This document shows positions 49,501 to 63,967 of a DNA stretch of 64,000 nt, in pieces. The translations under genes and the position numbers were made by a program. The DNA is taken from IMG/VR virus record IMGVR_UViG_3300017763_000002, positions 62,001 through 126,000 of that record; one strand, 5' to 3'. The notes beneath the pieces were generated by a model. It worked only from the letters and a program-made list of their open reading frames with translations. It was not told the origin of the DNA and ran no database searches. Every line of letters begins with the position of its first letter. Within the stretch, counting starts at the first letter, position 1.

Positions 49501-52500
49501 GGTATCATTATAAGATATACTATTTCCATCAGGCTCTACAGAATTTATATAACAAGTGCCAGTTGTACTTGATTTAAAATTTGCTAGAGTTACAGCTGAT
49601 GCGTCTGTTTTATCTTCTGGATATACTTTTACTCTAAAGTTTGCGTTAGTTAGAGGTGTGCCGTCACTAAAAACGGCGTTATCAATGTCCACGAATATAT
49701 TTACTATCTCTGAAGACGGAGATTCTATCAAAGAGCTTTCTGGATGCCCTTCAACTTGTATTTCATTGAATACTACAGTATCTATGTCAGATCTAATATC
49801 AACGCTCGCTACAGCCTTTCCAGACGGCTGCACTAACCTACCCCGAAGAACCAGTTCGTCGTTTTGAAAACTTAAAGAACTACCAGATGTAGTAGAAAAA
49901 GAAAATGTTCCGTCTCCGTTTATCCAAAAACCAGGATATCCTCCATATATACCACCATAGTTTTCACTTTTAATTATTCCGTATTTACTAAATTTATTTT
50001 CGTTAGCACCTGGAGAATTTCCTGTGATTGTATTAGAATGCTGAACTGCGGTTTCTGCTTTTTGTCCTAAAATAATTTCATGACCTTGTATTGTTCCACC
50101 TGTAATTGTGTCTGCTGTAAGGTCGTTGACATGAGCGCTTTTTATAGAAGCTTCGTCTATCATTGCAGAGCCAATTACCGCATTAGCGAATGCGTGCCAT
50201 GCAGATGATACAGAATACGAACTACCTATCTTATTAACTCTAGCAATTACTATAGATCCAGACTGAGTATTTCCCGAAGAGTCTTTAGAATTTGCGCCAA
50301 CAAGAGAAGTTCTTTCTCCATGAGAATTCATTTCTCCATCGGCTTCCAAAGGCATGTGCATGCCATAATGTTTTCTTATTCCAACGTTTACAGGGTCAGT
50401 AGTTACAGCTGTTCCTGCTCCGTATTTTTTATGACTTTTCCAAGTATTATCGTTAAAAACTTCTAGATCTAAATCTTTTTTTACAGGATTGGCTCCAAAA
50501 TAATCTTCATGAGTCAATCCAGATCCATTATACAAAGAATTATTCCCAAGATCACTTATATTATATGCAGCGCTTGAAGGATTAAACATTGAAAAAGAAT
50601 AATATCCCTGAGTTTGAAATGTAATATTCTGATCAACGTCATTTAGCTTCTTCCATGCAGCTTCATCAGTTGCGTCTACAGCTTTTTTAAATTCTTGATT
50701 AGCAGAATCATAACCACCATCTTTATTCCAATAGATATATTTTATAAATCTATTAGCATTTGCGCTAGCCCACTCATCATGGCCGCTTACCACCGAAGAA
50801 GGAATATCAGTTCCCACAAATAATTCTTTTGTTAAGCTAATAGAGCCTGCCGGAATATAATGTGATTCTCCGTCTTTATATATAAAATGATTACTCCAAG
50901 ATAAATCAGATCCAGATACAGAAAAAGGATCACTTGGCACAAGAGCTACAGCCCCTGGCAGTTTTCCAGTGATATCTTGTTCAAAACTTGCTATATCTGT
51001 AACTTTAGTTTGCCCTAAAGTATATCCAGCATCTAATTCTAAAAACCCACTACGATTTCCAGCTTTATCTATAGCTTCAATAAAGAAATATCCCGTTTGA
51101 TTTGTCTCTCCTTCGATTTGGAGAGAGGTAGTAGAACACATAAATTGCTCTACTGTAACATAATTAGTAGGGCTTAAGGGAGATACTGGTAAAGAAGAAT
51201 TGAATCCATCTAAAGTTAACACTCCTGAAGTATTAGTTATATTTGTGATCCTTCTATCCAAATAAATAGAATCTGTTGTATTTTCCACCACCGATATTTC
51301 AGCCCTACTTCCATCGGCTTTAAAAATAGTAGCCATGTGAAGATCGTTTACTGCTGTTCCAGTAACATCTCGACTCCATTTTACATAATCTTTATTGGTA
51401 GTAGCTTTAGTAAAAGAAATGTTAGAACCAGAGTCAATATCCTGCGCAGTTCTATGATCTCTAACCATAGTAACTTTATACTCTATTGACTTTTCTCCGT
51501 CAGCTGGGGTGTCCCATTCTAAAAACCAGTTTTTAAATGATGTTTTTACTCCTCCGCTTGCTGGAGCAGAAGGAGCACTAGTGTCTAGAGCGCCAACAAA
51601 ACCCCTGTCGTTTCTACTGAACAACTTATAACTCGCAACCTTTACTTGATTTACAATAAAATTATCGCCAGGACCAAAATCATCGTAAGGCACCAATATA
51701 TAATCATATTCTGTAAAGTTCTCTAATATTTTTTTACCAGAAGAATCCGAGGTTCTAAGTAAAGGTACATTTTCATCAAACAAGGTTGACTGATTATCGT
51801 CATTAATAGATAAAGAGTTCGCTCCTTCAGTCGTTTGTGTCTTTACTAAATATTTAGCTTTTTTAAAATTAAATCCAGCGCCAGTAGATCTGTTTTTTAC
51901 TCCGGCGTCTTCACCAAAATCTATTGTAGCTGGATCAGCATTATATTGAGCTGCTTTTACCGTATCTTCTGTTAAAGAATAATCTCCTTCTCCAGTTCCA
52001 CTAGGAGATTTTTGTCCATAAGTTTTTGTTGATGTTGGCTTTAGTTGTGGCCTTCTATAAATTTCTATATGGCTAATTTCTTCATTAAATTCTAAATTGA
52101 ACTTAACAGACCCAATAGTATCAAACACATCAAAACTAAATTCCTGTCCGCCAGTGCCAGTACCGTCTCTTTTAATTACTGGCTTAGCATTAGTCCCAGA
52201 AGCCGTGTCTTCATCAATAACTTGTCCAGCAGCGTCAAGAATTGCTAATCTAAAATTTAAAGTTCTATTAGCTTCAGTAGCGTTACCTCCATTTAGTTCA
52301 GTTTGTATTACAGCATTTTCTTCAAAAGTTATATTATCTATAATAGTTTTAAATGTTTCTTGTTTTAGATCTATTAACCTTAAGTCGCTTTTATTTATTT
52401 TTGACTTAAACCTACTATCGTCGGTTATTTTAAATGCATCGACCACATGAGTTCCAGACGCATCATAAAAGTACCCAACAATACCTTTGATAACTGCTAT

Positions 52501-53796
52501 CTGATCCAGCTCGTCTTCCTTAAATACTATAGAATTACCGTTTAAATCTGTAAGAGCCCACGAAACATTAAATTTATTTTGAACAGGAGTTACTGCAATA
52601 TTATCTATCTTTACAGTAGACTCAAAAATTTTACCTGTAGTATCAGTCACACTATAATTTTCATCTATTTCTACTAATCCAGTAGATTTAGGGCAATAAA
52701 CTGCAGATAACCCAAACGCATCATGTACTTCAATTACATATTGATATTGATTTCTATATTCTGAATTAGAGCGCCCATTAGACCACTTCTGTGGCACTAC
52801 TATAGATGCTGATTTCTTCTCTGCAGAAGATAAATTAGCTACTTCTTTTTTAGATGCAAGACTCCAACTAGAACTCAATCCATTCTTAATATATTGCTTT
52901 AATAATACTCTCTTAAAATCTATATCATCAGCTTCAAAAGAAAAATGAAAGTCATTCTTAATAGTATTAATAAATTGAGAAAGTAATTTAGTTTTTTCGT
53001 TTTCTAAAATTAAATTTAATGTACATGTTTTTTCTACGGAGTCTGCAGCAAAAGTTAAAGTTCTAGCTGTAAGTTCTAATTTTAATTTCCTATTATTAAA
53101 TGTACCAGAAAGAGCCCGAAATATAGTTTCTGAAAAATCTATCTCAAACAGAAAACCTATCCACCATTTGCCATTGTCATAATCCCAGTTTGGAAACGCG
53201 TCTTGTATTATTTTTTGTTCTGCAACAGAATCTACTTTTGTAAAAACGCCTGCAGAAGTCTCTCGATATATACATAGGTCAAAACCCCTTAATAACCTAT
53301 CAAAAGAAGTATTAGAGCTAATTGATTCGCCTTCAGAAGGGTGCCCTGGAGGAGCGTACAAAGACCAACTGATAGTAGGAGCGTTTCCTGCGAAATTTAA
53401 ACTAAGATCTACAGTATTTCCTGGGGTAAACATTGTTCCAGATATAGACCTTGAAGTTATTTCCGAATCTTCACAAAAAACTTCTGCAAAAGAAAAAGTA
53501 TTATCCCCCAAATCATTACCCATTATTTGAGTTACCTTTTCATCATACGCAGATCTAATTCCTAATTCATTTTCAGCGTACAGTCTTACATTAAAATTAC
53601 CAAAAGTACCACCCAGGTCTATAGAAGCATAAACTTCTATGCCAGCGCTTAAATTATTACTAGACCTACCAGCTAAAAGATCCCTACCCGTCCCTAGGTT
53701 TTTATTAAATGAACCTCGAGAAGAAGAGCCTACGGCAAAATAAGAATCAGTTAAACTGAAAATCTTAAACTTAATAAATATTCCTGAAGATGCCAT
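43540..53796 (-). CDS. Giant tail fibre/tip protein (gpJ C-terminal part) with C-terminal peptidase S74 chaperone
   Basis: 3418 aa; FN3-like segments (FNVRLYAENELGIRS; APSAPASG..FLEW); J-type IGSAMIDEASIKSAHVNDLTADTITGGTI; GG.NN beta-repeats; FALSDKKYK..GVIAQE..VKYEKITPLLIEAMKE. Confidence 0.85.
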   Translation of the reverse strand: MASSGIFIKFKIFSLTDSYFAVGSSSRGSFNKNLGTGRDLLAGRSSNNLSAGIEVYASIDLGGTFGNFNVRLYAENELGIRSAYDEKVTQIMGNDLGDNTFSFAEVFCEDSEITSRSISGTMFTPGNTVDLSLNFAGNAPTISWSLYAPPGHPSEGESISSNTSFDRLLRGFDLCIYRETSAGVFTKVDSVAEQKIIQDAFPNWDYDNGKWWIGFLFEIDFSETIFRALSGTFNNRKLKLELTARTLTFAADSVEKTCTLNLILENEKTKLLSQFINTIKNDFHFSFEADDIDFKRVLLKQYIKNGLSSSWSLASKKEVANLSSAEKKSASIVVPQKWSNGRSNSEYRNQYQYVIEVHDAFGLSAVYCPKSTGLVEIDENYSVTDTTGKIFESTVKIDNIAVTPVQNKFNVSWALTDLNGNSIVFKEDELDQIAVIKGIVGYFYDASGTHVVDAFKITDDSRFKSKINKSDLRLIDLKQETFKTIIDNITFEENAVIQTELNGGNATEANRTLNFRLAILDAAGQVIDEDTASGTNAKPVIKRDGTGTGGQEFSFDVFDTIGSVKFNLEFNEEISHIEIYRRPQLKPTSTKTYGQKSPSGTGEGDYSLTEDTVKAAQYNADPATIDFGEDAGVKNRSTGAGFNFKKAKYLVKTQTTEGANSLSINDDNQSTLFDENVPLLRTSDSSGKKILENFTEYDYILVPYDDFGPGDNFIVNQVKVASYKLFSRNDRGFVGALDTSAPSAPASGGVKTSFKNWFLEWDTPADGEKSIEYKVTMVRDHRTAQDIDSGSNISFTKATTNKDYVKWSRDVTGTAVNDLHMATIFKADGSRAEISVVENTTDSIYLDRRITNITNTSGVLTLDGFNSSLPVSPLSPTNYVTVEQFMCSTTSLQIEGETNQTGYFFIEAIDKAGNRSGFLELDAGYTLGQTKVTDIASFEQDITGKLPGAVALVPSDPFSVSGSDLSWSNHFIYKDGESHYIPAGSISLTKELFVGTDIPSSVVSGHDEWASANANRFIKYIYWNKDGGYDSANQEFKKAVDATDEAAWKKLNDVDQNITFQTQGYYSFSMFNPSSAAYNISDLGNNSLYNGSGLTHEDYFGANPVKKDLDLEVFNDNTWKSHKKYGAGTAVTTDPVNVGIRKHYGMHMPLEADGEMNSHGERTSLVGANSKDSSGNTQSGSIVIARVNKIGSSYSVSSAWHAFANAVIGSAMIDEASIKSAHVNDLTADTITGGTIQGHEIILGQKAETAVQHSNTITGNSPGANENKFSKYGIIKSENYGGIYGGYPGFWINGDGTFSFSTTSGSSLSFQNDELVLRGRLVQPSGKAVASVDIRSDIDTVVFNEIQVEGHPESSLIESPSSEIVNIFVDIDNAVFSDGTPLTNANFRVKVYPEDKTDASAVTLANFKSSTTGTCYINSVEPDGNSISYNDTDDINNGTTQFSLNFTDEANVDPTPKEQADGIYNHKFLIKENGVIRIPEYFTVDVELYYDSGLIDHVPGREYHAGDVVLDSGNKYTAKRNVPSKDSSNQNIALDGVVGSTYWENEGAGEDRLVASQRKIIESFIEPASAIAYELKGSPSSQVMQNSRNGSGVLSEVNMFANYGTEARIKLDQTVLDVWALNGIDEIEIYREMILGVTPTSYDPAKAYVAGDVVVHNSNKYMCVQNNTGSAPPAVSDFEVTITASTKWNPVSKILIGKANAAKNKIEYINFRLSQEGATTLDTANKLYRESFGYNQIAGLQIKFSAFYGSNEIAAETVDMVPSGVNSGVLTFHSTTDRDNDDLLNVIERSIGVSGTNRQISAFGPNDKKTIYWEANYSAGNNDLIQTLQGTIELEAASGATLTKSNITVSTDTSNDTGYEAIVDVDNTNDVRRISLLIKSRDSGASAKEEISIVNEIDVPKNLNVVLPRQFIFFSREQGSVKNNILRLENIVPFQVLYGQDTAPINSDDVLVVVPSFGYIVNGKALKGLLYGYNYDGATMDFGTTVGDYPNIETDIQNTFGTLPASLAEDKTQEYQLFQKYIGSTSSNEWCFKEKNEAGISTTIIVSESDDYYYFIPKSAVGDEAAKKAGKISLKATLNINDQGITANKITHKDVQQLNIIELAKDGENPLLSALTNSSVTGNADESKNIVNATRGAGLSEVEIFRGNKKVFLAPNKITLSKSGTNYVFTLDTTVNYIKYDGIMNASTAPDSFSLKDPEGNDITISSSAINNYESISLSDVNATSLIVENTTTFLPSDDARKKKMVLLNNSSQPVGHFTLNWHQDGYDVSLSEDDFIQPFSAVDSAANNIDCSVSNLNFDKDVGATEPATPLTPAANKPLVTLYTRNNSIEACVDLTGMNEKNAIKDTSGNEHTSMSFGFPIKVYINKLSQVQSLVPRMNLGISQQGKAGPSFQFRGGYTPESKYFGDDTSQDMVSWEVTVSGNNVTRFYYIIRGSTSQGGVSKGYDSSTQQTTNYISGITPAALDGTQSTQQEQYWQEIDNVLQPTATSLLLADDILVKKGIVVGIDTAIESAGSGQSGFIASQLEPRFIPDNPRGNIIDTGDITDNSGNTVTSATRVEAQVFDGGDFMGLSDLSKAVASGKTYKTPRDFLPGFFLGSTTAQYLKSSGNAYETYLTSQLEMYSPFGNYLRWDGKNLIIRGGIIEASVKDDLFGVMSSSSTALTLKPTNPQVGNQTFIGGGFNNKILNEVDLSNLDSSGNMAAAYYGTLASSIVGGGNNVISSYGVSYPARFSSICGGFGNAIGDSFSTIGGGYYNSIGVDRTESNSGVNTSGINAVLSGSNNSIENSSYSFVGSGFANTIEHSIYGSIINGFNNYIGGGTTQSSISPSNITYDTNDVITEIYVKGFASVDGVNTDVLNNAAVTNNQRYKIILQEKFSDPGKINAKVGETHPSYVAGWRTDADFNLYKSISSYKLYLGFDKASNYANDAFNIFGELCFNESQQQAASSPERTFDTGYLTENNKPVCIRVGDSTQQSTRTFKLGFIDGNTFKYCVVKTHTSLWPYIKIQGLDNTYKIQIDQTTKQIKLSNKSDVQSSFETATHRNAATIDAADTPVANFTASSTLDTPTEKQISVAVPDPSSSSIGHFSFNSIFGGDYNQVISSRRSTVVGGRNNKIKFIERGLISGVDNLIIGEQKTSSESLAQGFIVFGRDNQAVLSSLGESSTAASSGYTSSWQAVNGASGTPTDYGQMSNVIFGGANLVRNASKLSILGSNNELLIKQADGNTAAASIAQVASEVTILGTDNKIRISDQVEVSNLGIFGTNFNLTETEMVQNSFYIGNPMVDDTVEISKLTRVFVAADGGAFFTGDVISFALSDKKYKTNILPISNSIDKLMKISGVSFKWKDNQSIYSGNDVGVIAQEIKEVLPEVVEEGRLGLKVKYEKITPLLIEAMKEQNSKIEYLEEKIKELSLAVDKLK

Positions 53797-53797
53797 A

Positions 53798-56700
53798 TTA
53801 GGTACTCTGTGTTAAATCTACTATCTCCACTATTTCTGGAGCCACTGGAGCCTCCATAGAAACTTGTGGGGGTATAGGGAATACTGGCTTTTGTATAGCA
53901 AGATCTTTTTCTATTAAGTCAAATTTGTCCCTATTATATTCTGAAGCTTTAATTTTATATTTTCCGGGATCCACTTCATCAATAGACACAATTCTATATT
54001 GCATTCTGCCCACATTTTTAAAGCTGTTTATATTTGCAACCATGTCGTTCTCAAAATTCTGGATTGAACTTTGTGAGCTATATGTATCAGGAGAAAAACC
54101 AGACAAATCACTTTCTAAAACTTCTCTATTTGAAATTCTAATATACTTTCCAGAACCAATTGCAGATACATCGAAAGAAGATTGACCAAGAACGATTGTT
54201 CCTGGCAACGTCGATCCTGTAGCTGAAGAGATATGGTATATGTCAGAATCTAATTCAACTCTCTCTAAAAAATATTTAGGCTCTAGAGTTACATTACCAG
54301 ATCCTATGGGCTCATGAACTAAGAATACATTTTGAGATATTTGCTTAATCCAACCTCCGTTTTCTCGATCCCCTCCAAGCCTAAAACTTTTTAACCAGCT
54401 GGCGTTCGGCGTGTTATATTTATATTGAAATTTGCTTTGATCAAAAGAGCCACCAACATCTATAATAACCTGTATATCTCCCAACCCTAAACCCTTCGAA
54501 GACTTCTGCCTAAGAGTTACCTTCTTTTGTGTTGAAGAGCTATCAAAATTTGATATATCAAAAATTTTATACCTCCCTAGCCAAGGAGACTTTTTATATA
54601 CTGAATCAGGTATATCCTCTCCGCCTAACTGCTGGTGAATAAAGTCTGTTTCTGCTGTGTCGTATTCTTGTATTGATTGTAAAGCATTTCTTTTGTATCC
54701 TCTTATCGACCAGACTGCGCCAATAGGTATTTCTGATAAATTTTGCAAAGTTTTTTGATTGTTTCCATATACATAATAATAATGCTCTCCACCTGGAATT
54801 TCTGGATATTCATTACCAGTCTCAACTTGAAAACCTCCGTCTTGAATTTGAACTAAAGTGCCACCATCAGAAATTTCAAAAGTATTTTTTTGTTGTGCTG
54901 CATCACTAATTAAAACTGTATAGTCTTTATTAGATTCTATTCCTGTAGGAAGCCTTCCGAAAGTTGTAAACCTTATAACGTCTCCATTAATAAGCCCATG
55001 GCTATTACTTAGAATGGTTGAGCCTCCAACGATCACATTAAATTTAAACTTAGATTTTAAATCTATTATAGAGTTAGAAACGTGATCAACAAATCCATCA
55101 AAATAAAGTAGTTGCGGACGAGATATTCCAGATATCATAGACATTTGCTCTTGAACATCAAAAGAATCTAAATTTTTTGCAAGACCAAACATTTTTTTAT
55201 ATAAACCAGTTTTATCTTTAGCCCCTTCTGAATTCTCTCCAACACTCTCATATCCCCTACCACACATAATTGTCAGCTCTACAGGATTTCTAGCGTCATT
55301 AGGCATGCTAGGGTTGTAAAAAGACAAATCATCCATAACTTTATCTACCAATACAGATCTTGAAGAAGTTTGTATTTTCTTAATTCTTCCATTTGCATTC
55401 TCTCCGTAGCGTCGAGAATCAGACACTTCAATTATCGCCCCTGGAGCAAGTAAAGAAGCTTCCATTCCAGTCTCAAAAGTAACATATTCATTTTCTAAGT
55501 TTGGAGCAAGAACCGTAAACTTAGCCAGCCTTCTGGCTTGTCCCCTAGAGGTGCATCCTACAGCCAGGATCTCTTCTAATTTATAACCAAACTTATCAAT
55601 TCCACCAGAATCTTCGTAGTACTCTACCTTACTCCTAAAATCATCAAACTTATCTGCGTACCTAACCTTACAAGCTGTAACTCTAGATGTCCTAGGGCTG
55701 CCAGCGTAACTAAAACCTTCTTCCGTTACATTTGAATCGGCGAATATCATGGATGGGTCCTTTTTAAACTCAGAAGCAAAAGATACTTTTCCTGCGCTGT
55801 AGGCAACAACCGTTCTAAATACAGTACATATTTCTTTTACAGCTCTCAACGCTTCTTCTTTTTCTTTGAATAACATATTAGCAGAAAACCTAGGCTCAAC
55901 GATTGGGTAACTAACAGACATCACGCAGCTGCCAGTAGAAATTCCAGTTGATTTGTCAGTAGACACGCTATCCCAAAAGTTAGGTCCAATTAAATTTATT
56001 TGTTGAGTTTCAGCATTCACGCTAACAACAGTTCTCTCCTCAATTGATCCGTCGCTCATAAAAAAAGCTATTTTTCTTCCTGCAGCGTACTTAGAATTAC
56101 TATTACCAAGATTAAATTCACTAATAAATGATAGTCGTTTTTCGCTTTGAGAGTTCGTATAGTCGTAATTTATTGTAACTGAAAATGTATTCTCACTTGG
56201 CTTTGTAGACAAAAAGATATTTCTACTTTGTTGAGACGCGGTGCTTGTAAATTTTCTTTTTGGATTTTCTAAAGGAAATCCTGTTTCAACTAGTTCGTCA
56301 CAAAATTTAGCTGCTGCGTAAAGCTTCCATATATCAATGTCTGCTATAGTAAACCCAAAAGAACCAACACCATAACGTCTATTGAGTAATATATCGGCCA
56401 ATATCCAAGCTGGATTATCAGTCCACTCTAAATATTCTTCTGTGATTGCTCCGTATGATAAGTCTTGTTTGCTCTGACCTTTAAAAAGCCCGTCCCAGGC
56501 GCCATGATATTTTCTAGACAAAGGGTTATAATTAGAAGGTACGGCGATTTTCTTTAGTTTCGCTATATAATTTCTTTCTGGAAGTTGCGGGAAGTTTACA
56601 GCGTCAAAAGGAACTTTAACACAAGCCACTCCTGGGTGAGAATATTTTATCGTCTTACCCATTAATCCGTCCATCGAAGTTATAGCAGACAAACTCATGT

Positions 56701-58696
56701 TTGTAGATTTCTCTCTAAGATCTTTTGGGTCGCTAAGTTCTCTTGTTAAGCGACAAAGAGTAAGAACCAAGCTTTCGTTTGGACCAAAATAAGGTAGAGC
56801 AAAATGCATATCCAATCCAGCGGGGCTTGTACATATTCCGTTGATAATTATTTCGGAGTGCTGAGTCTTACCACACAAGTAAATCATTCCATCAGCACCC
56901 AAAACACGGAATCCCCCTCTATTACTTGTTCCGTATTTTTTGTAAGTTTCTTTCTTTATCAAAGGCATAATCTTGTCATAATAATTATACGAGACTTCAG
57001 TCGCAGATTTACCAGTCCTCAAAGACGAAACTATATCTACTAATATTTCCCCTGTACTAGTTCTTTCATTTCTATATTGATCGTCTGCATAAATATCATC
57101 TATCGCCTCAATTAAATTCTTACCTCCTAAGTTTGCAAAATTATTAGAACCGCTAAGAATTTCAGTAGATGATATTGCTAATCTAAATTTCTCCACGAAA
57201 TTAAATATGCTATTACAAAGCGAAAATACCGAGTTATCCCCAAAAAATATTGCTCTTGAAAATTGAATAATTAAAAAAGAAGAGCTTGATGACCATGTAA
57301 CTGGATCTTGTGCTTGATTTTCAGAACTTAAAAAACTAAGCACTCTTCTTTGTGAATTGCTGGTAGAAGACCAGGTTGTTCCTCCGTCTCCTCCGCCCCA
57401 GCCCTTTTCCCTGGGATATACCAATGGTATTGTTGCTGGCCCATCTCGAAGACAAGCTACCACCTTAATCTCCATACCGCTAGTTCCCGATACAGACTTA
57501 GACCTTGCGCCAATACCAAAAAACCCTCTCCTCACCCTTTGATCTGTCCAATTATGAAACATTTGTTTGGGCGAAAAGGTGACTTTAAGCATTTGAGTGT
57601 GAGTTCTAGTGATTGGGTAAGAAAATACCTTAGCTCCATTTGCTTGGGCATCCTGAAATACCGTAGGCAGTCCAGTCAGTACGGCTGGAGGTTTATTAGA
57701 TCCTTTGTCTGGCCCAGGCAGACCAGAAGAAGAAGAGCTCTCGGATTCTCCCGCAACAAAAAAACCATAAGCTGGCTCAAATCTTCCATCCATATAACCA
57801 AGAGTTCCCGTAGGCTGCACATCGTTTTCATTAAGTAAAAAATTTAAAGTTTGAGTTGGATGGTTCATTATAGCCATGTCCGATAAAAATATTGACTTTA
57901 ATGCTAAGTTGTCATTAAAAGTTCTATATGAATTCATATCTCCGTCGTTTTTAACTCCGCAGATATTACCAGCACCATCACATAGCCCTGCTATTGGTCC
58001 TTCAGATATTACATCATATACATTATATGTAGTAAAAGTTTCTATCAGTGCTCCTTTGGCCGCCCCAGACTTATCTTTATTAGTTCTATTGTATGATATT
58101 GTATTAGACCCTATTTTAAGAGTTCCGTACCCCACAGGAATAGGGGCTCCTTGAGCGGTAGTGTTCGGCCGATCGTCAAACAGATATGATTTTGTTCTTC
58201 GCGTTTGATCGCTAACCTTAGGAGATGGAAACAATGCGTTAGCAATGCCTGATATAGCTATTGGGGCTAATATACTAAAAGCCATACTACTTAAACTCAT
58301 GCCTCCTATAGCGGTCGCAGCAGCACCTATGCCTGCAGCCGCAGCACCAATCAAAGGAGCAACAATAAACTTACCATCAACTATAGGTATAAAATGTATT
58401 TCATCATCACTAGAACTGCAGCTTAAATTTTTATCAGTACAAAATATATCTTTTAATAAATCTTCATCAAACTTATCTTTTTTTAAAAAATTAGATATTT
58501 TCTTTCTTTTCTTCTCTCCTATAGAAGCTATTGCAAAATCACCGCCTTCTTGAGCTAGATTTATTAACACTTGTCTAAACCTTCCATCAGTGTTTACATC
58601 TATGGCTTCTACAGCTTCTGAAGGAGACGCAACATTAAGCTCCCACTCTTCATCAAAGTGATCCTTAAAAACGCCGTGCAAGAAAATCTTTTTCAT
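53798..58696 (-). CDS. Tail tip protein: lambda gpI-like N-terminus fused to gpJ-like core
   Basis: gpI-like MKKIFLHG..WELNVASPSEAVEAI..IHFIPIVDG; QGAPIPVGYG; DVISEGPIAGL; WTDNPAWIL..RYGVG..FCDELV..EPRF; GCTSRGQARR; YRIVSIDE..ASEYNRDKF. Confidence 0.88.
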   Translation of the reverse strand: MKKIFLHGVFKDHFDEEWELNVASPSEAVEAIDVNTDGRFRQVLINLAQEGGDFAIASIGEKKRKKISNFLKKDKFDEDLLKDIFCTDKNLSCSSSDDEIHFIPIVDGKFIVAPLIGAAAAGIGAAATAIGGMSLSSMAFSILAPIAISGIANALFPSPKVSDQTRRTKSYLFDDRPNTTAQGAPIPVGYGTLKIGSNTISYNRTNKDKSGAAKGALIETFTTYNVYDVISEGPIAGLCDGAGNICGVKNDGDMNSYRTFNDNLALKSIFLSDMAIMNHPTQTLNFLLNENDVQPTGTLGYMDGRFEPAYGFFVAGESESSSSSGLPGPDKGSNKPPAVLTGLPTVFQDAQANGAKVFSYPITRTHTQMLKVTFSPKQMFHNWTDQRVRRGFFGIGARSKSVSGTSGMEIKVVACLRDGPATIPLVYPREKGWGGGDGGTTWSSTSNSQRRVLSFLSSENQAQDPVTWSSSSSFLIIQFSRAIFFGDNSVFSLCNSIFNFVEKFRLAISSTEILSGSNNFANLGGKNLIEAIDDIYADDQYRNERTSTGEILVDIVSSLRTGKSATEVSYNYYDKIMPLIKKETYKKYGTSNRGGFRVLGADGMIYLCGKTQHSEIIINGICTSPAGLDMHFALPYFGPNESLVLTLCRLTRELSDPKDLREKSTNMSLSAITSMDGLMGKTIKYSHPGVACVKVPFDAVNFPQLPERNYIAKLKKIAVPSNYNPLSRKYHGAWDGLFKGQSKQDLSYGAITEEYLEWTDNPAWILADILLNRRYGVGSFGFTIADIDIWKLYAAAKFCDELVETGFPLENPKRKFTSTASQQSRNIFLSTKPSENTFSVTINYDYTNSQSEKRLSFISEFNLGNSNSKYAAGRKIAFFMSDGSIEERTVVSVNAETQQINLIGPNFWDSVSTDKSTGISTGSCVMSVSYPIVEPRFSANMLFKEKEEALRAVKEICTVFRTVVAYSAGKVSFASEFKKDPSMIFADSNVTEEGFSYAGSPRTSRVTACKVRYADKFDDFRSKVEYYEDSGGIDKFGYKLEEILAVGCTSRGQARRLAKFTVLAPNLENEYVTFETGMEASLLAPGAIIEVSDSRRYGENANGRIKKIQTSSRSVLVDKVMDDLSFYNPSMPNDARNPVELTIMCGRGYESVGENSEGAKDKTGLYKKMFGLAKNLDSFDVQEQMSMISGISRPQLLYFDGFVDHVSNSIIDLKSKFKFNVIVGGSTILSNSHGLINGDVIRFTTFGRLPTGIESNKDYTVLISDAAQQKNTFEISDGGTLVQIQDGGFQVETGNEYPEIPGGEHYYYVYGNNQKTLQNLSEIPIGAVWSIRGYKRNALQSIQEYDTAETDFIHQQLGGEDIPDSVYKKSPWLGRYKIFDISNFDSSSTQKKVTLRQKSSKGLGLGDIQVIIDVGGSFDQSKFQYKYNTPNASWLKSFRLGGDRENGGWIKQISQNVFLVHEPIGSGNVTLEPKYFLERVELDSDIYHISSATGSTLPGTIVLGQSSFDVSAIGSGKYIRISNREVLESDLSGFSPDTYSSQSSIQNFENDMVANINSFKNVGRMQYRIVSIDEVDPGKYKIKASEYNRDKFDLIEKDLAIQKPVFPIPPQVSMEAPVAPEIVEIVDLTQST

Positions 58697-58699
58697 ACC

Positions 58700-59044
58700 T
58701 TATACCTTTATAGGTTTACACCCTTCCTCATTAAAAAATACAAAATTATCATAAATACAACTATATATTAAAAGAGGAATGGCATGATTACGAAAGATAT
58801 CCTTATCTTTCTCAGAAGGGTGTGCGTCAGATTGAGGGTGGGAATGAAAAATTGAGTGGATTTTATCTTTAAGTAAAATAACCTTTGGGTCTATCTTGAA
58901 ATTGCTACTTTTATCTTCAGCAAGATTCTCCATTTTCATAAACACTAGTTCATCAAACTGGAATATGACTCCAGCGATTTCGTTAGAACTTAACCTGGAC
59001 TCGGCTTTAATTCCTTCAAGTAATAGAGTAGAATATTCACACAT
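58700..59044 (-). CDS. JAB/MPN-domain tail assembly protein (gpK N-domain-like)
   Basis: EIAGVI..IFHSHPQSDAHPSEKD is a JAMM motif. Start refined to ATG 59044 after AGGTGA. Confidence 0.75.
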   Translation of the reverse strand: MCEYSTLLLEGIKAESRLSSNEIAGVIFQFDELVFMKMENLAEDKSSNFKIDPKVILLKDKIHSIFHSHPQSDAHPSEKDKDIFRNHAIPLLIYSCIYDNFVFFNEEGCKPIKV

Positions 59045-59045
59045 C

Positions 59046-60077
59046 TCACCTGTGCTTAAAGCTAGCGGTTTCTGGAAAACCACCAAAAGGTACAGCTTCT
59101 CCGTTAGATAAGTTGGCTCCCCACCTTTTCAAGCAAGAAGATAAAGTTCTCTCGCAACTATCTAGTATCCAAAAGTCTTTAGATATATATGGATTAGGAG
59201 ATGGATCTTCGTGCGCTTGAATACACACAAATATAGAAGGCACGTATGGTTCTTTGTGTCCTGGCCAATTAACAACGTTACCTTTCTCGTAACCTCTATC
59301 AACGTCCCACTTAATACTGTCTAGAAAATGTTGCTTATTGCCACCCCAACTATTACTTTGTATAACCTCATTAGTTCTTGGGTCGGTAAATTTAGTTATA
59401 CCGTATTTTGCAAATGTAGATCCCGTTTCAGTGCCACAAGGTCCACCAGAATAACCACAACCAAGACCTCTATACCTAAACGAACAGTGGTCTGCTAGCA
59501 TTTCTCTCGCAGGAAATATAATACCCTCCATCTCCAACATGGAAGTTAGTTCAAATTCTATACTCTCTTTAGTTTCAGCGGTTTTCCTGTTTATATAAAA
59601 TATATCATCAGGCAAATGCGCGTTAGGGTCAGACATTTTACTTGGATTAACTGGCGCCCCGCTTCGAGATCTAAAATTAGCATCATCTAAAAATTTTACG
59701 AACGTTCTTTTTCTAGTTACCTTACATCCATGAAAATCATAATTCATCAAAACAATTGTAGATAGCAGTCCAGAAGGGTTAGCGATAGATAGCTTTGGCC
59801 TTGGTAGCCTTCCATCAGAAGGCAACTCAAAATCAGTTGTAAATATCGGTAGGGGTTGATAAGATTTACCCTGCCAAATAATAGGGTTGGTATTATTAAC
59901 AGAAGCACAAAATCTATATACAGGCTCGGGCCCCAAATCGGTCTTGTGTTTTTTACTTAAAAAAGAAAAATCATTTTGCAAATGAGAGAAATCTATTTCA
60001 AACATTTCTACAATCGCATCTGATTCTAGTTTAAATATTTCTTTTGTTATATTTTTTTCTGAACTTCCAGGTTCCAT
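59046..60077 (-). CDS. Minor tail protein L (lambda gpL-like)
   Basis: IVEMFEIDF; IIWQGKSYQPLPI; LPRPKLSIAN; KVTRKRTFVKFLD; IEFELTS; Fe-S Cys CSFRYRGLGCGY..C..C; PFGGFP. Confidence 0.88.
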   Translation of the reverse strand: MEPGSSEKNITKEIFKLESDAIVEMFEIDFSHLQNDFSFLSKKHKTDLGPEPVYRFCASVNNTNPIIWQGKSYQPLPIFTTDFELPSDGRLPRPKLSIANPSGLLSTIVLMNYDFHGCKVTRKRTFVKFLDDANFRSRSGAPVNPSKMSDPNAHLPDDIFYINRKTAETKESIEFELTSMLEMEGIIFPAREMLADHCSFRYRGLGCGYSGGPCGTETGSTFAKYGITKFTDPRTNEVIQSNSWGGNKQHFLDSIKWDVDRGYEKGNVVNWPGHKEPYVPSIFVCIQAHEDPSPNPYISKDFWILDSCERTLSSCLKRWGANLSNGEAVPFGGFPETASFKHR

Positions 60078-63000
60078 TACTTAATTTTCGAGCCTCCTTT
60101 TAAATTTGTAGAAGATTGGTTATTTATTGTTAAATTACCACTATAATATATTAGTGCAAACCCAGCTTTTCCACCACTCACAGCAAACATTTTTGATTGA
60201 TCATTATCACTTCCGTCTTCTCCTGGACCTCCTCCATTAGCCCCAGGCTGCATTTCATATAGAAGAGAATGTGTTTTTGCTGCGCCTCCTGTTCCTCCAG
60301 AATCTATACTGCCAGATACACCCATGATATTACCAGACTCCCCCATTCCAGCTCCACCACCGCCACCGCCACTAAAGTCTATAAAGGATGAAACAGATAT
60401 GGGCCAGTCAAAATATTGATCTTGATCTACATTGCCTCCTGCACCGCCACCACCGCCTCCAAAAACACCTCCGGATGCAGGTAGGTTTATAACAAAGTTA
60501 ACAAGAACATTTGTTTCAGAAATCTCTAAAGCATTTCCACCCTTATCCCCAGATTGCGGCGGCGTTAAATACGGAATGGAAGTTTTACTTCCGTCGTTTT
60601 CATCCATCTTTCCCTCAGAAAACATACCATCACCACCTCGACCTCCCTTTCCGATTACAAAAGCATTTTCTTTAATATTGATATTTACATTTTGATGAGC
60701 AAGAAACCCAGAACCTGATGTTATCGCTGGTTGATCAGTAGATTCTGATAATATCACCCCATATATATTAAAGTTTATTATTTTTATATCCGATAGAGCA
60801 AATCCTTGAGCGTTTGCCTCCTCAATTAATATAGATTTAAGATTTATATTTGCAAGAGAACTCACACCAAGATTTTCTATCACGATAGCATCTACTGTAG
60901 CAGAGTCTTCATTAGATATTGCCACAAAAGAATCCATCTCTCTAGCATTATCCCCAGTCTTTACAGCTAAAATATCTCCATCAGAACCAGATATCCCAGC
61001 AAAAGTAAAGGCAGATAAATCAGAAACATACCTCCATGACCCAGAATGAAAAACAACTCCCAGAGCCAGCAAACCCTCTACCCCATTATTTAAAAGTATA
61101 GAGTTTAATTCTTCTTGATTTTGAGGCTCTGCAAGTTTTCCAGACTCTCGCATTGCGCTTGCTTTAAAATTATCAATTTGATTTACTGGGTCTACAGCAT
61201 GAACTTCTGAGAATAAATCTGCTGAGTATTTCTTAATATATATATCTCCAGCCAATTCTGTTCCATTTATTTCTATATCTATCGTTTCTTCTTTAGATCT
61301 TTCGTAAGCTATGTGTGCGTTAACTTCGGCTGAATTAGTTTGAGTATCTGTAGATCCTTCGGTATTATATTGCAGGTTAAGTTTAGCCGCATAAGCTTCG
61401 TTTTGTTCAGAATCAGATGCGTTAGCAAAAATTTCTACATATATTTTTTCTCCAGGATCTAAATGTGTTTTATTTTGCAGCAAATATGCGCTTTGGTGAG
61501 TCGTGGGAGCCGACCTGCTTGTTAAAGTTCCATTTGCAGAATCAATTTGAGATATTCTCCCTAAATTATCTTGAGCGAACACATTTGATCCAGTAAGATA
61601 AATAAATACCCCGCTTTCAGAATTATTATAGTTTTCTACGGAAGTTAATAATTGTAAACCTCCAGCAGATGTAGAGTACTCGCCGATTATGCTTTTGGAA
61701 AATCTATTAGATGGATTATCAGTAATGGTTGCCGTTATATTTTCAGCTTTTTTCTCCCCAATGTTTTCTATTTCCACTATATTTCTAAGTTTAAAAGTTT
61801 GCCCAGAGGGAGGAGTTTGTGATGATCTTAAGTCAATATCTGTATTAAATACTAGCCTAGCCTCGTCTTTTTCTGCGGCCACGCTCAAGCCATCAATTTC
61901 GTCATCATCTAATGGGGTATTCTGACCGATGGTAAATTGTTCAAATTTAGCAGACACAGTATGACTATCCTTGAATGCGTAGGTATGAGTCCATTCTGTA
62001 CATACAAATCTACGCTTCCTATTGTATGGAGCAGGAGGAGTATACAAAAAAGATTTGTAACCTAAATGCGACTCTAAGAAATGTATTATTGCGTAAGCTT
62101 CTTCAGCGCTTCTATTTTCAAATTTCAAAGTGAACTTCAATACATTAATATTAACTTTATTTCCGGGCAAGTATTGAGTATACGCAGAGTTATTACCAGA
62201 TATTTCTATAATGTCAGGGTTATGCTGAACAGTAAATGTTGTAGATGGAAACCAGTGAAATTCTCTAGTCCATATATTTTGATTTATTGATGTAATTTTT
62301 CCTGTAATAAAATGCGTGCTAATAGGCGGATCTCCTCTTGAAGTAGATTCTCCTACATGATAATAGTATCCATCATTCTCTTCTACATATACAACATCAT
62401 TCTTTCTATATACTTTATCCTCGTCATATATATCAGGACGATTAACATACATATAATCATTTCTATTTAAAATGCTTGTGCTATTATTAAAAATACTTAA
62501 ATTTATATTATGAACATCTTCTGTTTCTATTGTATGATCAAATTGAAAGCAATAAAATTTTCTTACTAAGTTTTCTGTATTAAGATATGGAAAAAATAAT
62601 GTAGCACCATCAAGATAAAAACCTTCTATACCTTGATCATAGTCTAAAGTATATTGCCTACTTCCAGATTCTTCGTGTTGTCCTAATTTATTTTCTATAA
62701 AATGAAGTATGGCATTAGCCTCTCTCGAGCTTCTGTTTGTAAAGTTTAAATCAAATGTTGCCTTTAAACTGTTTGGGCCTTTTGGTCGATGAGCTTTGTA
62801 TCCGTCGCCGTATGCATTTTCTGTATTTTCTGAAGAGAATGTTACAGATGATCCGTAGTCTGGATCGAATATAAAATAATCTTTAGTCCAGTTTGCCTCG
62901 AACGTATTATCTAAAAATGGATCTACATCTGGGTCTTCAACAACCTTAACTAATATTCTTAAACTTTCTGGAGTACTTATAACAGGCATTAGATCTTCCT

Positions 63001-63967
63001 TGGTTATTTGGTGATAGTACTCTCCGCTTGTAGAATAATGAGCAAGGACCATCACAGAATTAGTAAGCCTAGCAATAGAAAAAGTGCCCAAGATTACCTG
63101 ATTTGATCTCTGTATTTGTACGGTCTGTCCTACAGCGAAAGCGTTAACCAAAGGAGTTCCATCATTAGCATGAGTAAAGCCTGTTACGCTACGGTATATC
63201 AATGTTCCCACGTGATTTTCAACTAACGGAACATCTGGAGGATAACATTCACAATTAAAAGTCCTGTCTGTTTCGTCATTAAAATTACGAATATCTTTTT
63301 TGGCATAATAAAAACTATTACTTTCTCTGTGCCTAACTATATCAAATTTTTTATAATCATTAGCTTTACTCCAATATCCTTTATAGTTCTGAACAGAGGA
63401 TATATAATAGTTATCCGCCTCAAGTTCTCCTCCTTCTGGCGAGTCACTGATATTATCAAAATTTATTTGCTCTGTTGTTTCTGTGTTGTATAAGCCTACG
63501 CTGGTAGTTGCCCTGGTTGTGGCAGTAAATCTTTGGTTGTCAACTGAAGCTTGATCTATATTAGATTGCGAGGGGGTTAAACTTTTCTTTACCCAAAAAG
63601 CATTTTGAATTTCTAGGTTAGAACCATTAGGTCCAGTCCAATGAGTAGAGTGATACCATTGATAAGTAGTCCAATCCCCCGTCTCTGACATAAGCTGCGC
63701 AGTAATTTCAACAAGCTTGTGGCCTTCTGTTGGGTTCCAAGAGCTTGAGTCTATAACTTCTGGGGTCATGCCCCCGCTCAACACTGGCATTTGAAAGTTT
63801 TTCAGAGGGCAGCCGCTGTACCCCAAATTGTTTTTAACAGACGACACGTTTTTTGTGCATTCATAAAAACAAGTCAAATTATATCCTGCGTCATCATAAT
63901 ACGTGACGATGTCTCCAACATGATAGTTGCGCTGTGGGTTCCAAAAGCCTGTGTATTTATTACTCAT
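60077..63967 (-). CDS. Minor tail protein with two gpM-like domains and a Gly-rich adhesin-like C-terminus
   Basis: gpM-like FIFDPDY..YGDGY..GPN..FDLNF..AILHFIE and FHWFPS..LKF..AIIHFLESHLGYKSFLYTPP..FVCTEW..VSAKFEQ; W(N/S)xxxxYxxGDIV repeats; polyglycine tail. Confidence 0.75.
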   Translation of the reverse strand: MSNKYTGFWNPQRNYHVGDIVTYYDDAGYNLTCFYECTKNVSSVKNNLGYSGCPLKNFQMPVLSGGMTPEVIDSSSWNPTEGHKLVEITAQLMSETGDWTTYQWYHSTHWTGPNGSNLEIQNAFWVKKSLTPSQSNIDQASVDNQRFTATTRATTSVGLYNTETTEQINFDNISDSPEGGELEADNYYISSVQNYKGYWSKANDYKKFDIVRHRESNSFYYAKKDIRNFNDETDRTFNCECYPPDVPLVENHVGTLIYRSVTGFTHANDGTPLVNAFAVGQTVQIQRSNQVILGTFSIARLTNSVMVLAHYSTSGEYYHQITKEDLMPVISTPESLRILVKVVEDPDVDPFLDNTFEANWTKDYFIFDPDYGSSVTFSSENTENAYGDGYKAHRPKGPNSLKATFDLNFTNRSSREANAILHFIENKLGQHEESGSRQYTLDYDQGIEGFYLDGATLFFPYLNTENLVRKFYCFQFDHTIETEDVHNINLSIFNNSTSILNRNDYMYVNRPDIYDEDKVYRKNDVVYVEENDGYYYHVGESTSRGDPPISTHFITGKITSINQNIWTREFHWFPSTTFTVQHNPDIIEISGNNSAYTQYLPGNKVNINVLKFTLKFENRSAEEAYAIIHFLESHLGYKSFLYTPPAPYNRKRRFVCTEWTHTYAFKDSHTVSAKFEQFTIGQNTPLDDDEIDGLSVAAEKDEARLVFNTDIDLRSSQTPPSGQTFKLRNIVEIENIGEKKAENITATITDNPSNRFSKSIIGEYSTSAGGLQLLTSVENYNNSESGVFIYLTGSNVFAQDNLGRISQIDSANGTLTSRSAPTTHQSAYLLQNKTHLDPGEKIYVEIFANASDSEQNEAYAAKLNLQYNTEGSTDTQTNSAEVNAHIAYERSKEETIDIEINGTELAGDIYIKKYSADLFSEVHAVDPVNQIDNFKASAMRESGKLAEPQNQEELNSILLNNGVEGLLALGVVFHSGSWRYVSDLSAFTFAGISGSDGDILAVKTGDNAREMDSFVAISNEDSATVDAIVIENLGVSSLANINLKSILIEEANAQGFALSDIKIINFNIYGVILSESTDQPAITSGSGFLAHQNVNINIKENAFVIGKGGRGGDGMFSEGKMDENDGSKTSIPYLTPPQSGDKGGNALEISETNVLVNFVINLPASGGVFGGGGGGAGGNVDQDQYFDWPISVSSFIDFSGGGGGGAGMGESGNIMGVSGSIDSGGTGGAAKTHSLLYEMQPGANGGGPGEDGSDNDQSKMFAVSGGKAGFALIYYSGNLTINNQSSTNLKGGSKIK

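What the first reader, a model, noticed from the sequence alone, without database searches (positions are those of the whole stretch)
60077..60720. T-even gp38-like polyglycine adhesin domain grafted onto a gpM-like tail protein
The C-terminus reads VNINI..VIGKGGRGGDG..GGNALEI..INL..GGVFGGGGGGAGG..GGGGGGAGMG..GGTGG..GANGGGPG..GGKAG. This parallels the T2-type gp38 adhesin pattern (GRGGNGG..GGHCI..GAIAGGGGGGG), a polyglycine-II sandwich with variable loops. Here it ends a protein in the lambda gpM position rather than capping a long tail fibre. Inference: a receptor-binding module displayed from the distal-tail hub.
Basis: partly seen in the sequence, partly recalled or inferred. Interest (0 to 1): 0.6.

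Follow-up and report, generated by a model that had tools for sequence, protein, structure and literature searches.

The report
Gp38-type adhesin fused to tail ring
A 205-kb uncultured marine phage with a lambda-like tail tip has a 1296-residue tail-ring protein (two tandem gpM domains) that ends in a domain of the same glycine-rich fold as the T-even gp38 receptor adhesin, so a module known from long tail fibre tips is here built into the tail ring itself.

Summary
The last ~257 residues of the minus-strand ORF 60077-63967 (1296 aa) form a glycine-rich domain (27% Gly against 6% elsewhere). It passes Pfam GP38 (PF05268: 29.1 bits, cut-off 25). Its family profile matches a T-even gp38 profile (hhalign 95.9%, E 5.5e-9). 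With a 26-row alignment it folds at pLDDT 93.5. The model matches only gp38 structures in the PDB: S16 6F45_D Z 20.1 (rmsd 2.6 Å, 186 aa), PP01 9V85 Z 19.8, next best Z 5.1.

The match covers the beta-helix and polyglycine sandwich. The N-terminal gp37-docking domain of gp38 is absent.

The carrier has two tandem gpM domains (residues 364-490 and 566-690). It lies after the tape measure gene (two unknown ORFs intervene) and directly before gpL, a gpK-like JAB protein and a gpI-J fusion.

The fusion is conserved in 16 of 19 related IMG/VR loci. The gene occurs in marine metagenomes from 13 studies.

Glycine motifs are conserved and loops vary across the family. Close relatives show purifying selection (dN/dS 0.03), and the longest loop is conserved, so hypervariability is not shown.

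Receptor binding is inferred, not tested. I rate this a new variant of known kinds, of moderate interest.

The parts
60077..63967 (-). Whole gene: 1296-aa 'evolved gpM' tail protein (P0001), stop codon included
   Evidence: ORF list and translation. The start MSNKYTG is conserved in relatives. Full-length homologues of 1272-2132 aa exist.
62888..63967 (-). N-terminal extension, residues 1-360, unknown fold, with a weak CBM5/12-like motif at residues 9-23
   Evidence: No family over threshold; CBM_5_12 E 0.018. 25-94% identical to relatives.
62498..62878 (-). First gpM (Phage_min_tail) domain, residues 364-490, with a ~20-aa insertion
   Evidence: PF05939 E 6.3e-8 on the isolated piece. BLASTP to the second domain E 2e-8. 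54-98% identical across the family.
62273..62497 (-). Insert between the two gpM domains, residues 491-565
   Evidence: No family hit. Diverges faster than the gpM cores.
61898..62272 (-). Second gpM (Phage_min_tail) domain, residues 566-690
   Evidence: PF05939 matches residues 569-677 to profile positions 2-106 of 108; E 4.5e-21 for the whole protein and E 2.1e-14 for the isolated piece.
60851..61897 (-). Arm or linker, residues 691-1039, unknown fold; the fastest-evolving part
   Evidence: Only a sub-threshold MG2 hit. No Atlas lead. 18-85% identity. dN/dS 0.12-0.28.
60080..60850 (-). gp38-type adhesin domain, residues 1040-1296: capping helix, beta-helix and polyglycine sandwich
   Evidence: PF05268 29.1 bits. 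hhalign 95.9%. AF2 pLDDT 93.5. VIA Z 20.1 to 6F45_D residues 59-249.
60158..60652 (-). Glycine-rich motifs and intervening loops, residues 1106-1270 (the predicted PGII sandwich with distal loops)
   Evidence: 19 invariant and 11 near-invariant Gly columns shared with T-even-type gp38. Glycine motifs 0.5-0.8 and loops 0.2-0.4 mean pairwise identity.
59046..60077 (-). gpL-like minor tail protein (343 aa), directly downstream
   Evidence: PF05100 E 5.4e-45; phrog_18.
58700..59086 (-). gpK-like JAB/MPN protein (128 aa)
   Evidence: PF14464 E 2.6e-6; phrog_30.
53798..58696 (-). gpI-gpJ fusion, central tail fibre or tip protein (1632 aa)
   Evidence: phrog_32 (tail assembly, residues 1-210) plus phrog_31 central tail fiber J and PF13550.

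Best explanation
The gene encodes the distal tail ring protein of an uncultured marine jumbo phage with a lambda-like, apparently non-contractile tail.

Shown: the protein contains two tandem gpM domains. After a ~350-residue arm it ends in a domain homologous to the T-even gp38 adhesin. That domain is predicted to have the same fold (beta-helix plus three-layer polyglycine-II sandwich) but lacks gp38's N-terminal gp37-docking domain, because it is attached covalently instead.

Inferred:
- Lambda's ring is six gpM copies in two alternating conformers. Three copies of this tandem protein would therefore build the ring and project three monomeric adhesin arms from the tube/tip junction, the place where Ur-lambda and T5 anchor their side fibres.
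- The loops between the glycine motifs would bind a host surface component and give a first, probably reversible, attachment. The gpJ-like central fibre and the 3418-aa fibre would then act.
For: Homology and fold:
- Pfam GP38 is over its cut-off.
- Pfam hits precomputed by the database list PF05939 + PF05268 on seven homologues.
- 29 of 30 nearest ESM-Atlas clusters are GP38.
- The family profile reaches P0020 and P0021, which carry stronger GP38 hits.
- The 26-sequence alignment keeps all glycine motifs in register with S16-type and T2-type gp38.
- hhalign gives 95.9%, E 5.5e-9.
- The AF2 model has pLDDT 93.5 and pTM 0.87.
- Foldseek finds only gp38 chains at E<1e-3. VIA gives Z 20.1 and 19.8 against 5.1 for the next chain.
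- Atlas and BFVD fold hits are GP38 proteins.

Carrier and position:
- Two gpM domains.
- Gene order: tape measure, two ORFs, this gene, gpL, gpK-like, gpI-J.
- No sheath family hit in the genome.

Conservation:
- 16 of 19 IMG/VR loci with the tandem gpM core keep the domain.
- The ring domains are about twice as conserved as the displayed modules.

Glycine-motif versus loop contrast, as in gp38.

Literature:
- Lambda gpM ring stoichiometry and its two conformers: PMC10721106.
- Side-fibre collar at the gpV/gpM junction: PMC12617516.
- gp38 architecture and role: PMC6851490, PMC12032242.
Against: - No binding data exist and the host is unknown.
- The nearest pair shows dN/dS 0.03 over the glycine motifs plus loops. 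A variant from another study differs by only ~1.5% there, no more than elsewhere in the gene. The rapid loop turnover typical of gp38 is therefore not seen at short range.
- The largest loop (residues 1115-1139; 25 aa against 4 in S16) is conserved across the whole family. This fits a constant ligand or an internal contact as well as it fits a variable receptor.
- The trimer test gave no verdict.
- The AF2 alignment contained four true gp38 sequences. No templates were used, but the model is not fully independent of the homology claim.
Confidence: 0.7

Rival explanations
1. The gp38-like domain is a structural or docking element, not a host adhesin. It would hold another tail component (for example the 3418-aa fibre or the gpJ-like fibre) or stabilise the tip.
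For: Strong purifying selection in close relatives. The 25-aa loop 1 with the motif GMxSEG...E..G...PP is conserved family-wide. The phage already has two large fibre proteins that could carry specificity.
Against: All characterised members of this fold family are receptor adhesins (PMC6851490, PMC12032242). The domain sits at the free C-terminal end of a long, fast-evolving arm. The other loops vary between subfamilies while the glycine motifs stay fixed. The three most distant relatives replace the domain with unrelated C-termini while keeping the ring, which is typical of exchangeable host-binding modules.
Confidence: 0.17
2. The region is only a low-complexity, glycine-rich (collagen-like or disordered) tail, and its resemblance to gp38 is compositional.
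For: Pairwise BLASTP with composition adjustment against S16 gp38 finds nothing. phmmer and hmmsearch against PDB sequences find nothing. The first AF2 run with 7 sequences was poor, at pLDDT 50.8.
Against: None of 1000 shuffles reach the real HMM score. Pfam is over its cut-off while no control genome is. The motifs are in register, including the non-glycine beta-helix rungs and the capping helix. The high-confidence fold has Z 20 to gp38 and nothing else above Z 5.1.
Confidence: 0.03
3. The fusion is an assembly or gene-calling artefact that joins a gpM gene to a separate gp38-like gene.
For: Metagenomic contigs break inside the poly-Gly coding stretch (~60348-60461) in all four runs laid. 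One homologue (P0008) is truncated there.
Against: The same uninterrupted reading frame is found in 16 independent IMG/VR loci and in many protein clusters of 1272-2132 aa. A single contig from another study spans 60168-61405, from inside the glycine motifs, across the domain's N-terminal boundary, into the arm (record 21). The junction between arm and domain is not at a glycine run.
Confidence: 0.02

Closest known systems
T2/T6/S16/PP01-type gp38 long-tail-fibre adhesin (Pfam PF05268; PDB 6F45 chain D, 9V85)
   Same: Same beta-helix plus polyglycine-II sandwich fold (Z 20.1, rmsd 2.6 Å over 186 of 191 residues of the matched range). Same order of glycine-rich motifs separated by loops. One domain per polypeptide.
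   Different: - No Gp38_N gp37-docking domain (PF21721).
- Not a free ~250-aa protein but the C-terminus of a 1296-aa protein.
- The carrier is a ring protein of a lambda-like tail, not a trimeric myovirus fibre.
- Loops 1 and 2 are much longer (25 and 21 aa), and loop 1 is conserved.
- No short-range hypervariability.
Lambda gpM distal tail protein (Pfam PF05939)
   Same: Two domains match the family. The gene lies directly upstream of gpL, gpK and gpI/J, and downstream of the tape measure gene.
   Different: Lambda gpM is a single 109-aa domain used six times in two conformers (PMC10721106). Here two domains are fused in tandem and carry about 1000 extra residues in four added segments.
'Evolved' distal tail proteins (Dit) of siphophages of Gram-positive bacteria, which carry carbohydrate-binding modules (from my own knowledge of the literature, not checked here)
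   Same: Same logic: the ring at the tube/tip junction itself displays host-binding modules.
   Different: They use a different Dit fold family (SPP1-type with a galectin domain). Their modules are insertions of CBM type, not a C-terminal gp38-type PGII domain. Their hosts and receptors differ.
Side-fibre attachment at the gpV/gpM junction in Ur-lambda (Stf collar) and T5 (p132/pb1)
   Same: Same location on the tail for accessory adhesion devices that speed up adsorption (PMC12617516).
   Different: There, separate trimeric fibre proteins dock non-covalently through a dodecameric collar. Here the adhesin is part of the ring polypeptide and is monomeric.
Other gp38-fold fusions in uncultured and marine phages (for example Prochlorococcus phage P-SSM2 Q58MW9, 1147 aa; DUF7483+GP38 clusters of ~629 aa; P0020 and P0021)
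   Same: A gp38-type domain at the C-terminus of a longer tail protein.
   Different: None of those carriers has a gpM domain. P0021's neighbouring gene carries a tail-collar domain, which points to a fibre context.

Membership tests
GP38 adhesin family (Pfam PF05268) | Match to the family HMM above the curated gathering score | tested here: met
   29.1 bits vs 25, E 1.1e-6, profile positions 28-204 of 218. 28 bits in the six-frame genome scan, with 0 of 14 control genomes over the cut-off.
GP38 adhesin family (Pfam PF05268) | Beta-helix with two extended turns that form a three-layer polyglycine-II sandwich | tested here: met
   AF2 model at pLDDT 93.5. Z 20.1 to 6F45_D residues 59-249 and Z 19.8 to 9V85_A; next best Z 5.1. 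This is a prediction only, and PGII backbone angles were not measured.
GP38 adhesin family (Pfam PF05268) | Ordered series of conserved glycine-rich motifs alternating with variable segments | tested here: met
   19 invariant Gly columns shared with T-even-type gp38. Glycine motifs 0.5-0.8 and loops 0.2-0.4 identity.
GP38 adhesin family (Pfam PF05268) | N-terminal attachment domain (PF21721) that docks on the gp37 trimer | tested here: not met
   No PF21721 hit, whereas S16 gp38 has it. The structural match starts at gp38 residue 59.
GP38 adhesin family (Pfam PF05268) | Free ~250-aa protein encoded next to the distal long-tail-fibre gene of a T-even-type myovirus | tested here: not met
   It is the C-terminal domain of a 1296-aa protein in a lambda-like tail-tip module. 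No sheath family hit in the genome.
GP38 adhesin family (Pfam PF05268) | Hypervariable loops that track host range | tested here: inconclusive
   Loops vary between subfamilies. However, dN/dS is 0.03 in the nearest pair, and contigs from another study show only ~1.5% difference. Raw reads were not available, so within-population diversity could not be measured.
GP38 adhesin family (Pfam PF05268) | Binds a host outer-membrane receptor | not testable with these tools
   The phage is uncultured and its host is unknown.
Lambda gpM / Phage_min_tail (Pfam PF05939) | Match to the family HMM above the gathering score | tested here: met
   75.7 bits vs 39 for the whole protein, in two stretches. Domain 2 alone scores 54.2 bits. 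Domain 1 alone scores 33.4 bits (below the cut-off) but is a paralogue of domain 2, BLASTP E 2e-8.
Lambda gpM / Phage_min_tail (Pfam PF05939) | Gene position between the tape measure gene and gpL | tested here: met
   Tape measure protein of 2343 aa, then two ORFs of 338 and 337 aa, then this gene, then gpL.
Lambda gpM / Phage_min_tail (Pfam PF05939) | Forms the six-domain ring between tube and tip | tested here: inconclusive
   Three-copy complex prediction scored 0.32, below the mark of 0.42, so no verdict. The ring is inferred from the lambda structures (PMC10721106).

The most novel reading that the evidence does not exclude
A clade of abundant marine jumbo phages with lambda-like tails has hard-wired the two gpM conformers into one tandem polypeptide. 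Each of the three ring subunits would be a complete side fibre ending in a monomeric gp38-type polyglycine adhesin. If so, the PGII-sandwich adhesin works without any trimeric fibre or docking domain. Its enlarged, conserved first loop would recognise a conserved surface structure of a dominant marine bacterium.
Probability: 0.4. Interest if true: 0.6.

Novelty: new variant of a known kind. Interest (0 to 1): 0.5.

Why it matters
Gp38 is described in the recent literature as a receptor-binding protein of Straboviridae that caps the long tail fibre (PMC12032242). My full-text searches found no report of this fold on a distal tail ring protein.

If the reading is right:
- The PGII-sandwich adhesin is a portable module that needs no trimer-to-monomer adaptor.
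- A lambda-type ring can be built from a duplicated subunit.
- The ring, not only fibres, can carry host specificity in phages of Gram-negative-type tail design.

The gene occurs in marine metagenomes from 13 studies. The adhesin could therefore be used as a probe to fish out the unknown host. It is also a compact, monomeric scaffold for engineered binders. It remains domain shuffling among known parts, which is a common theme for phage tail proteins.

Tried and rejected
Searches and tests that gave nothing usable:
- phmmer of the domain and hmmsearch of its 7-sequence profile against PDB sequences: no hit.
- tblastn of the whole protein and of the domain against 50,697 phage records: no match. 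The low-complexity filter and the distance of this phage from cultured ones both contribute.
- Pairwise BLASTP against S16 gp38: nothing significant.
- First AF2 run with only the 7 close homologues: pLDDT 50.8, glycine part unmodelled. Adding distant family members and four T-even-type gp38 sequences solved this.
- Word-based protein search with the domain alignment: swamped by poly-Gly words, one hit only.
- IMG/VR scans with the distant-subfamily alignment and with P0021: no confirmed loci.
- Three-copy complex prediction of the tandem gpM region: no verdict (score 0.32, mark 0.42). This is not evidence either way.
- ESM-Atlas feature search of the arm (residues 691-1039): best score 0.77, no lead.
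- Read laying: all runs are kept as contigs, so within-population variation in the loops could not be measured. The apparent 'joints' at 60367-60441 and the contig breaks there are best explained by the repetitive GGN coding stretch.

Readings rejected:
- Collagen-like or disordered glycine tail.
- T4-type gp38 chaperone, which is an unrelated protein that shares only the gene name.
- Assembly chimera.

Full report
**What is there**

The window is bases 62001-126000 of a 204,906-bp IMG/VR virus record that CheckV rates complete; G+C is about 35%. The finding lies at the 3' end of a minus-strand ORF, 60077..63967, of 1296 residues (P0001).

Glycine makes up 27% of residues 1106-1270 and 6% of the rest of the protein. 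The glycine codons are mixed GGA/GGT/GGC/GGG, not a simple nucleotide repeat.

**Is it a gp38-type domain?**

Sequence evidence:
- On its own, residues 1040-1296 hit Pfam GP38 (PF05268) at 29.1 bits (cut-off 25, E 1.1e-6, profile positions 28-204 of 218).
- A six-frame scan of the whole genome with that family finds this one place (28 bits). None of 14 control genomes is over the cut-off.
- 29 of the 30 nearest ESM-Atlas clusters by language-model features are GP38 clusters.
- Direct BLASTP to Salmonella phage S16 gp38 (fetched from HQ331142) finds nothing. Searches against PDB sequences also find nothing.
- A 26-sequence MAFFT alignment puts all glycine motifs in register. It contains this family, two bridging proteins (P0020, P0021) and four T-even-type gp38 sequences. 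It has 19 invariant and 11 near-invariant glycine columns. The preceding helix and beta-strand rungs also align.
- hhalign of the family profile (no gp38 sequences in it) against a T-even-type gp38 profile gives 95.9% probability and E 5.5e-9 over 208 columns.
- A shuffle control shows that motif order, not composition, carries the signal: 0 of 1000 shuffles reach the real score.

Structural evidence:
- With only seven close homologues AlphaFold2 failed on the glycine part (pLDDT 50.8).
- With the 26-row alignment and no templates, all five models scored 86-93.5; the best had pLDDT 93.5 and pTM 0.87.
- Foldseek against the PDB returns three hits at E<1e-3, all gp38: two chains of PP01 9V85, and S16 6F45_D.
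- VIA-align gives Z 20.1 (rmsd 2.6 Å, 186 residues, 29% identity) to 6F45_D residues 59-249, and Z 19.8 to 9V85_A. The next chain scores Z 5.1.
- 186 of the 191 residues in the matched range of gp38 are aligned, so the match includes the polyglycine sandwich and not only the beta-helix.
- gp38's first 58 residues, the gp37-docking domain, have no counterpart. PF21721 is not detected here although it is in S16 gp38.
- Predicted-structure libraries agree.
- Caveats: four real gp38 sequences were in the AF2 alignment, and I had no access to coordinates to measure PGII angles.

**The carrier and its neighbourhood**

- Pfam Phage_min_tail (lambda gpM) matches twice: residues 566-690 (E 2e-14) and 364-490 (E 6e-8, with a ~20-aa insertion). 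The two halves match each other at E 2e-8.
- Around these domains lie a 360-aa N-terminal extension, a 75-aa insert and a 350-aa arm without family assignment.
- Downstream on the same strand come gpL (PF05100, E 5e-45), a 128-aa JAB protein like the gpK N-domain, a 1632-aa protein that fuses a gpI-like N-terminus to gpJ, and a 3418-aa fibre with an S74 intramolecular chaperone.
- Upstream lie two unknown ORFs of 337 and 338 aa and a 2343-aa tape measure protein.
- No sheath family is detected in the genome.

This is therefore a lambda-type tail tip, and the gene occupies the gpM slot.

**Relatives**

- The word search found seven full-length homologues. Their database-precomputed Pfam hits all list PF05939 + PF05268.
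- The exhaustive profile search of 1.84 billion representatives found only 16 proteins at E<=0.001. Seven further tandem-gpM proteins of 1272-2132 aa were among them. So were the 573-aa and 535-aa proteins P0020 and P0021, which have clearer GP38 hits.
- A scan of IMG/VR with the gpM core gave 19 loci. Sixteen keep the glycine domain. The three most distant have unrelated C-termini on the same core.
- The ring domains stay 54-98% identical. The gp38-like domain falls to about 30% and the arm to about 18%.
- The gene is held at >=99% identity in contigs of three further studies and at ~95-98% in a fourth. Twenty runs from 13 marine or seawater studies carry at least part of it.

**Loop variability**

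- Across the family the glycine motifs have mean pairwise identity 0.5-0.8 and the intervening segments 0.2-0.4. This is the gp38 pattern.
- Two features differ from T-even gp38. The first distal loop is 25 residues (4 in S16), is predicted to include a beta-hairpin, and carries a family-wide conserved motif. The second loop is 21 residues.
- Between the window and its nearest relative, dN/dS over residues 1106-1270 is 0.03, lower than in the arm at 0.12.
- The variant contig from a fourth study differs at 10 of 683 bases in the domain. By my reading four are amino-acid changes (V1159I, V1168I, D1181N, S1220N), no more than elsewhere in the gene.
- Short-range hypervariability is therefore not shown. 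Raw reads, which could show it within populations, were not available.

**How it most likely works**

Shown: domain identities, gene order and conservation of the fusion.

Inferred:
- Lambda's gpM ring is six copies in two alternating conformers obeying three-fold symmetry (PMC10721106). A tandem gpM would fix the two conformers in one chain. Three chains would then make the ring and project three arms.
- The complex prediction neither supports nor contradicts this.
- The ring sits where Ur-lambda and T5 attach their side fibres (PMC12617516). The arms would thus serve as built-in side fibres whose gp38-type tips make the first contact with the cell.
- Covalent attachment removes the need for gp38's docking domain.
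- The main rival is that the domain is a docking or stabilising element. The conserved loop and the purifying selection keep this alive at roughly one chance in six.

**Novelty**

The parts are known. The combination is not in the literature I could search, and recent work describes gp38 as a Straboviridae fibre-tip protein (PMC12032242). gp38-fold domains on other long tail proteins do exist in databases, including marine cyanophages, so the module is clearly mobile. I rate this a new variant of known kinds, with moderate interest.

Noticed in passing
window 53798-58696 (-): The gpI-like tail assembly domain (phrog_32, residues 1-210) is fused to the gpJ-like central fibre protein in one 1632-aa ORF. 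In lambda, I and J are separate genes.
   Followed up: no
window 43540-53796 (-): A 3418-aa ORF directly after gpJ. It has a C-terminal Peptidase_S74 intramolecular chaperone and a CBM5/12 module at residues 1642-1669. It is probably a giant tail fibre.
   Followed up: partly
L008:2091-9119 (-) = G000:C1 ~127990-135018; L008:65-2091: The tape measure protein is 2343 aa, which by the usual ~1.5 Å per residue would mean a tail of roughly 350 nm (my inference). Two unknown ORFs (338 and 337 aa) lie between it and the gpM-like gene. One has a sub-threshold tail-tube-like hit, Phage_tube_2 at E 0.0012.
   Followed up: partly
window ~60348-60461 (-), and protein P0008: The poly-Gly coding stretch is a weak point for assembly and frame. 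Contigs of all four metagenomes laid break there or show spurious joints. Homologue P0008 leaves the frame right after the first GGV and ends early. This could be sequencing error or real slippage; I cannot tell which.
   Followed up: partly
window 58580-65467 vs L009: Nucleotide identity to the nearest IMG/VR relative is mosaic. It is 95-100% upstream of the gene and across the gpM core (about 62170-63370). It is 72-91% in the N-terminal extension and from the arm through the gp38-like domain into gpL and gpK. Synonymous divergence varies tenfold along the gene, from dS 0.13 to 1.36. This suggests recombination between lineages, with breakpoints near the ring-domain borders.
   Followed up: partly
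P0001 residues 9-23 (window ~63899-63943); relatives P0012, P0013, P0014, P0017: Weak to borderline CBM5/12 (chitin-binding type) motifs recur: at the N-terminus here, in the arms of relatives, and after the gp38-like domain of P0017. These evolved gpM proteins may carry several carbohydrate-binding modules.
   Followed up: no
L025, L026, L027: The three most distant loci with the tandem gpM core lack the glycine domain and have other C-terminal modules (950-1893 aa proteins). The ring appears to be a platform on which different end modules are exchanged.
   Followed up: partly
window 58700-59086 (-): The gpK-like protein is only 128 aa with a JAB/MPN domain and no NlpC/P60 half. Its start overlaps the end of gpL by 41 nt.
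   Followed up: no
window 16945-19068 (+), 20380-24435 (+), 36688-39123 (+), 2445-3965 (-): Other content of the window: two large proteins with thrombospondin type 3 (calcium-binding) repeats, a class I ribonucleotide reductase large subunit with an ATP cone, and a DnaB-type helicase. No tRNA genes in the window.
   Followed up: no
whole gene, window 60077-63967: The gene is present in marine, seawater and viral metagenomes of 13 studies from 2013 to 2025. The phage lineage seems widespread in the sea. The nearest cultured relatives of its gpL are only ~35% identical and infect Proteobacteria.
   Followed up: partly
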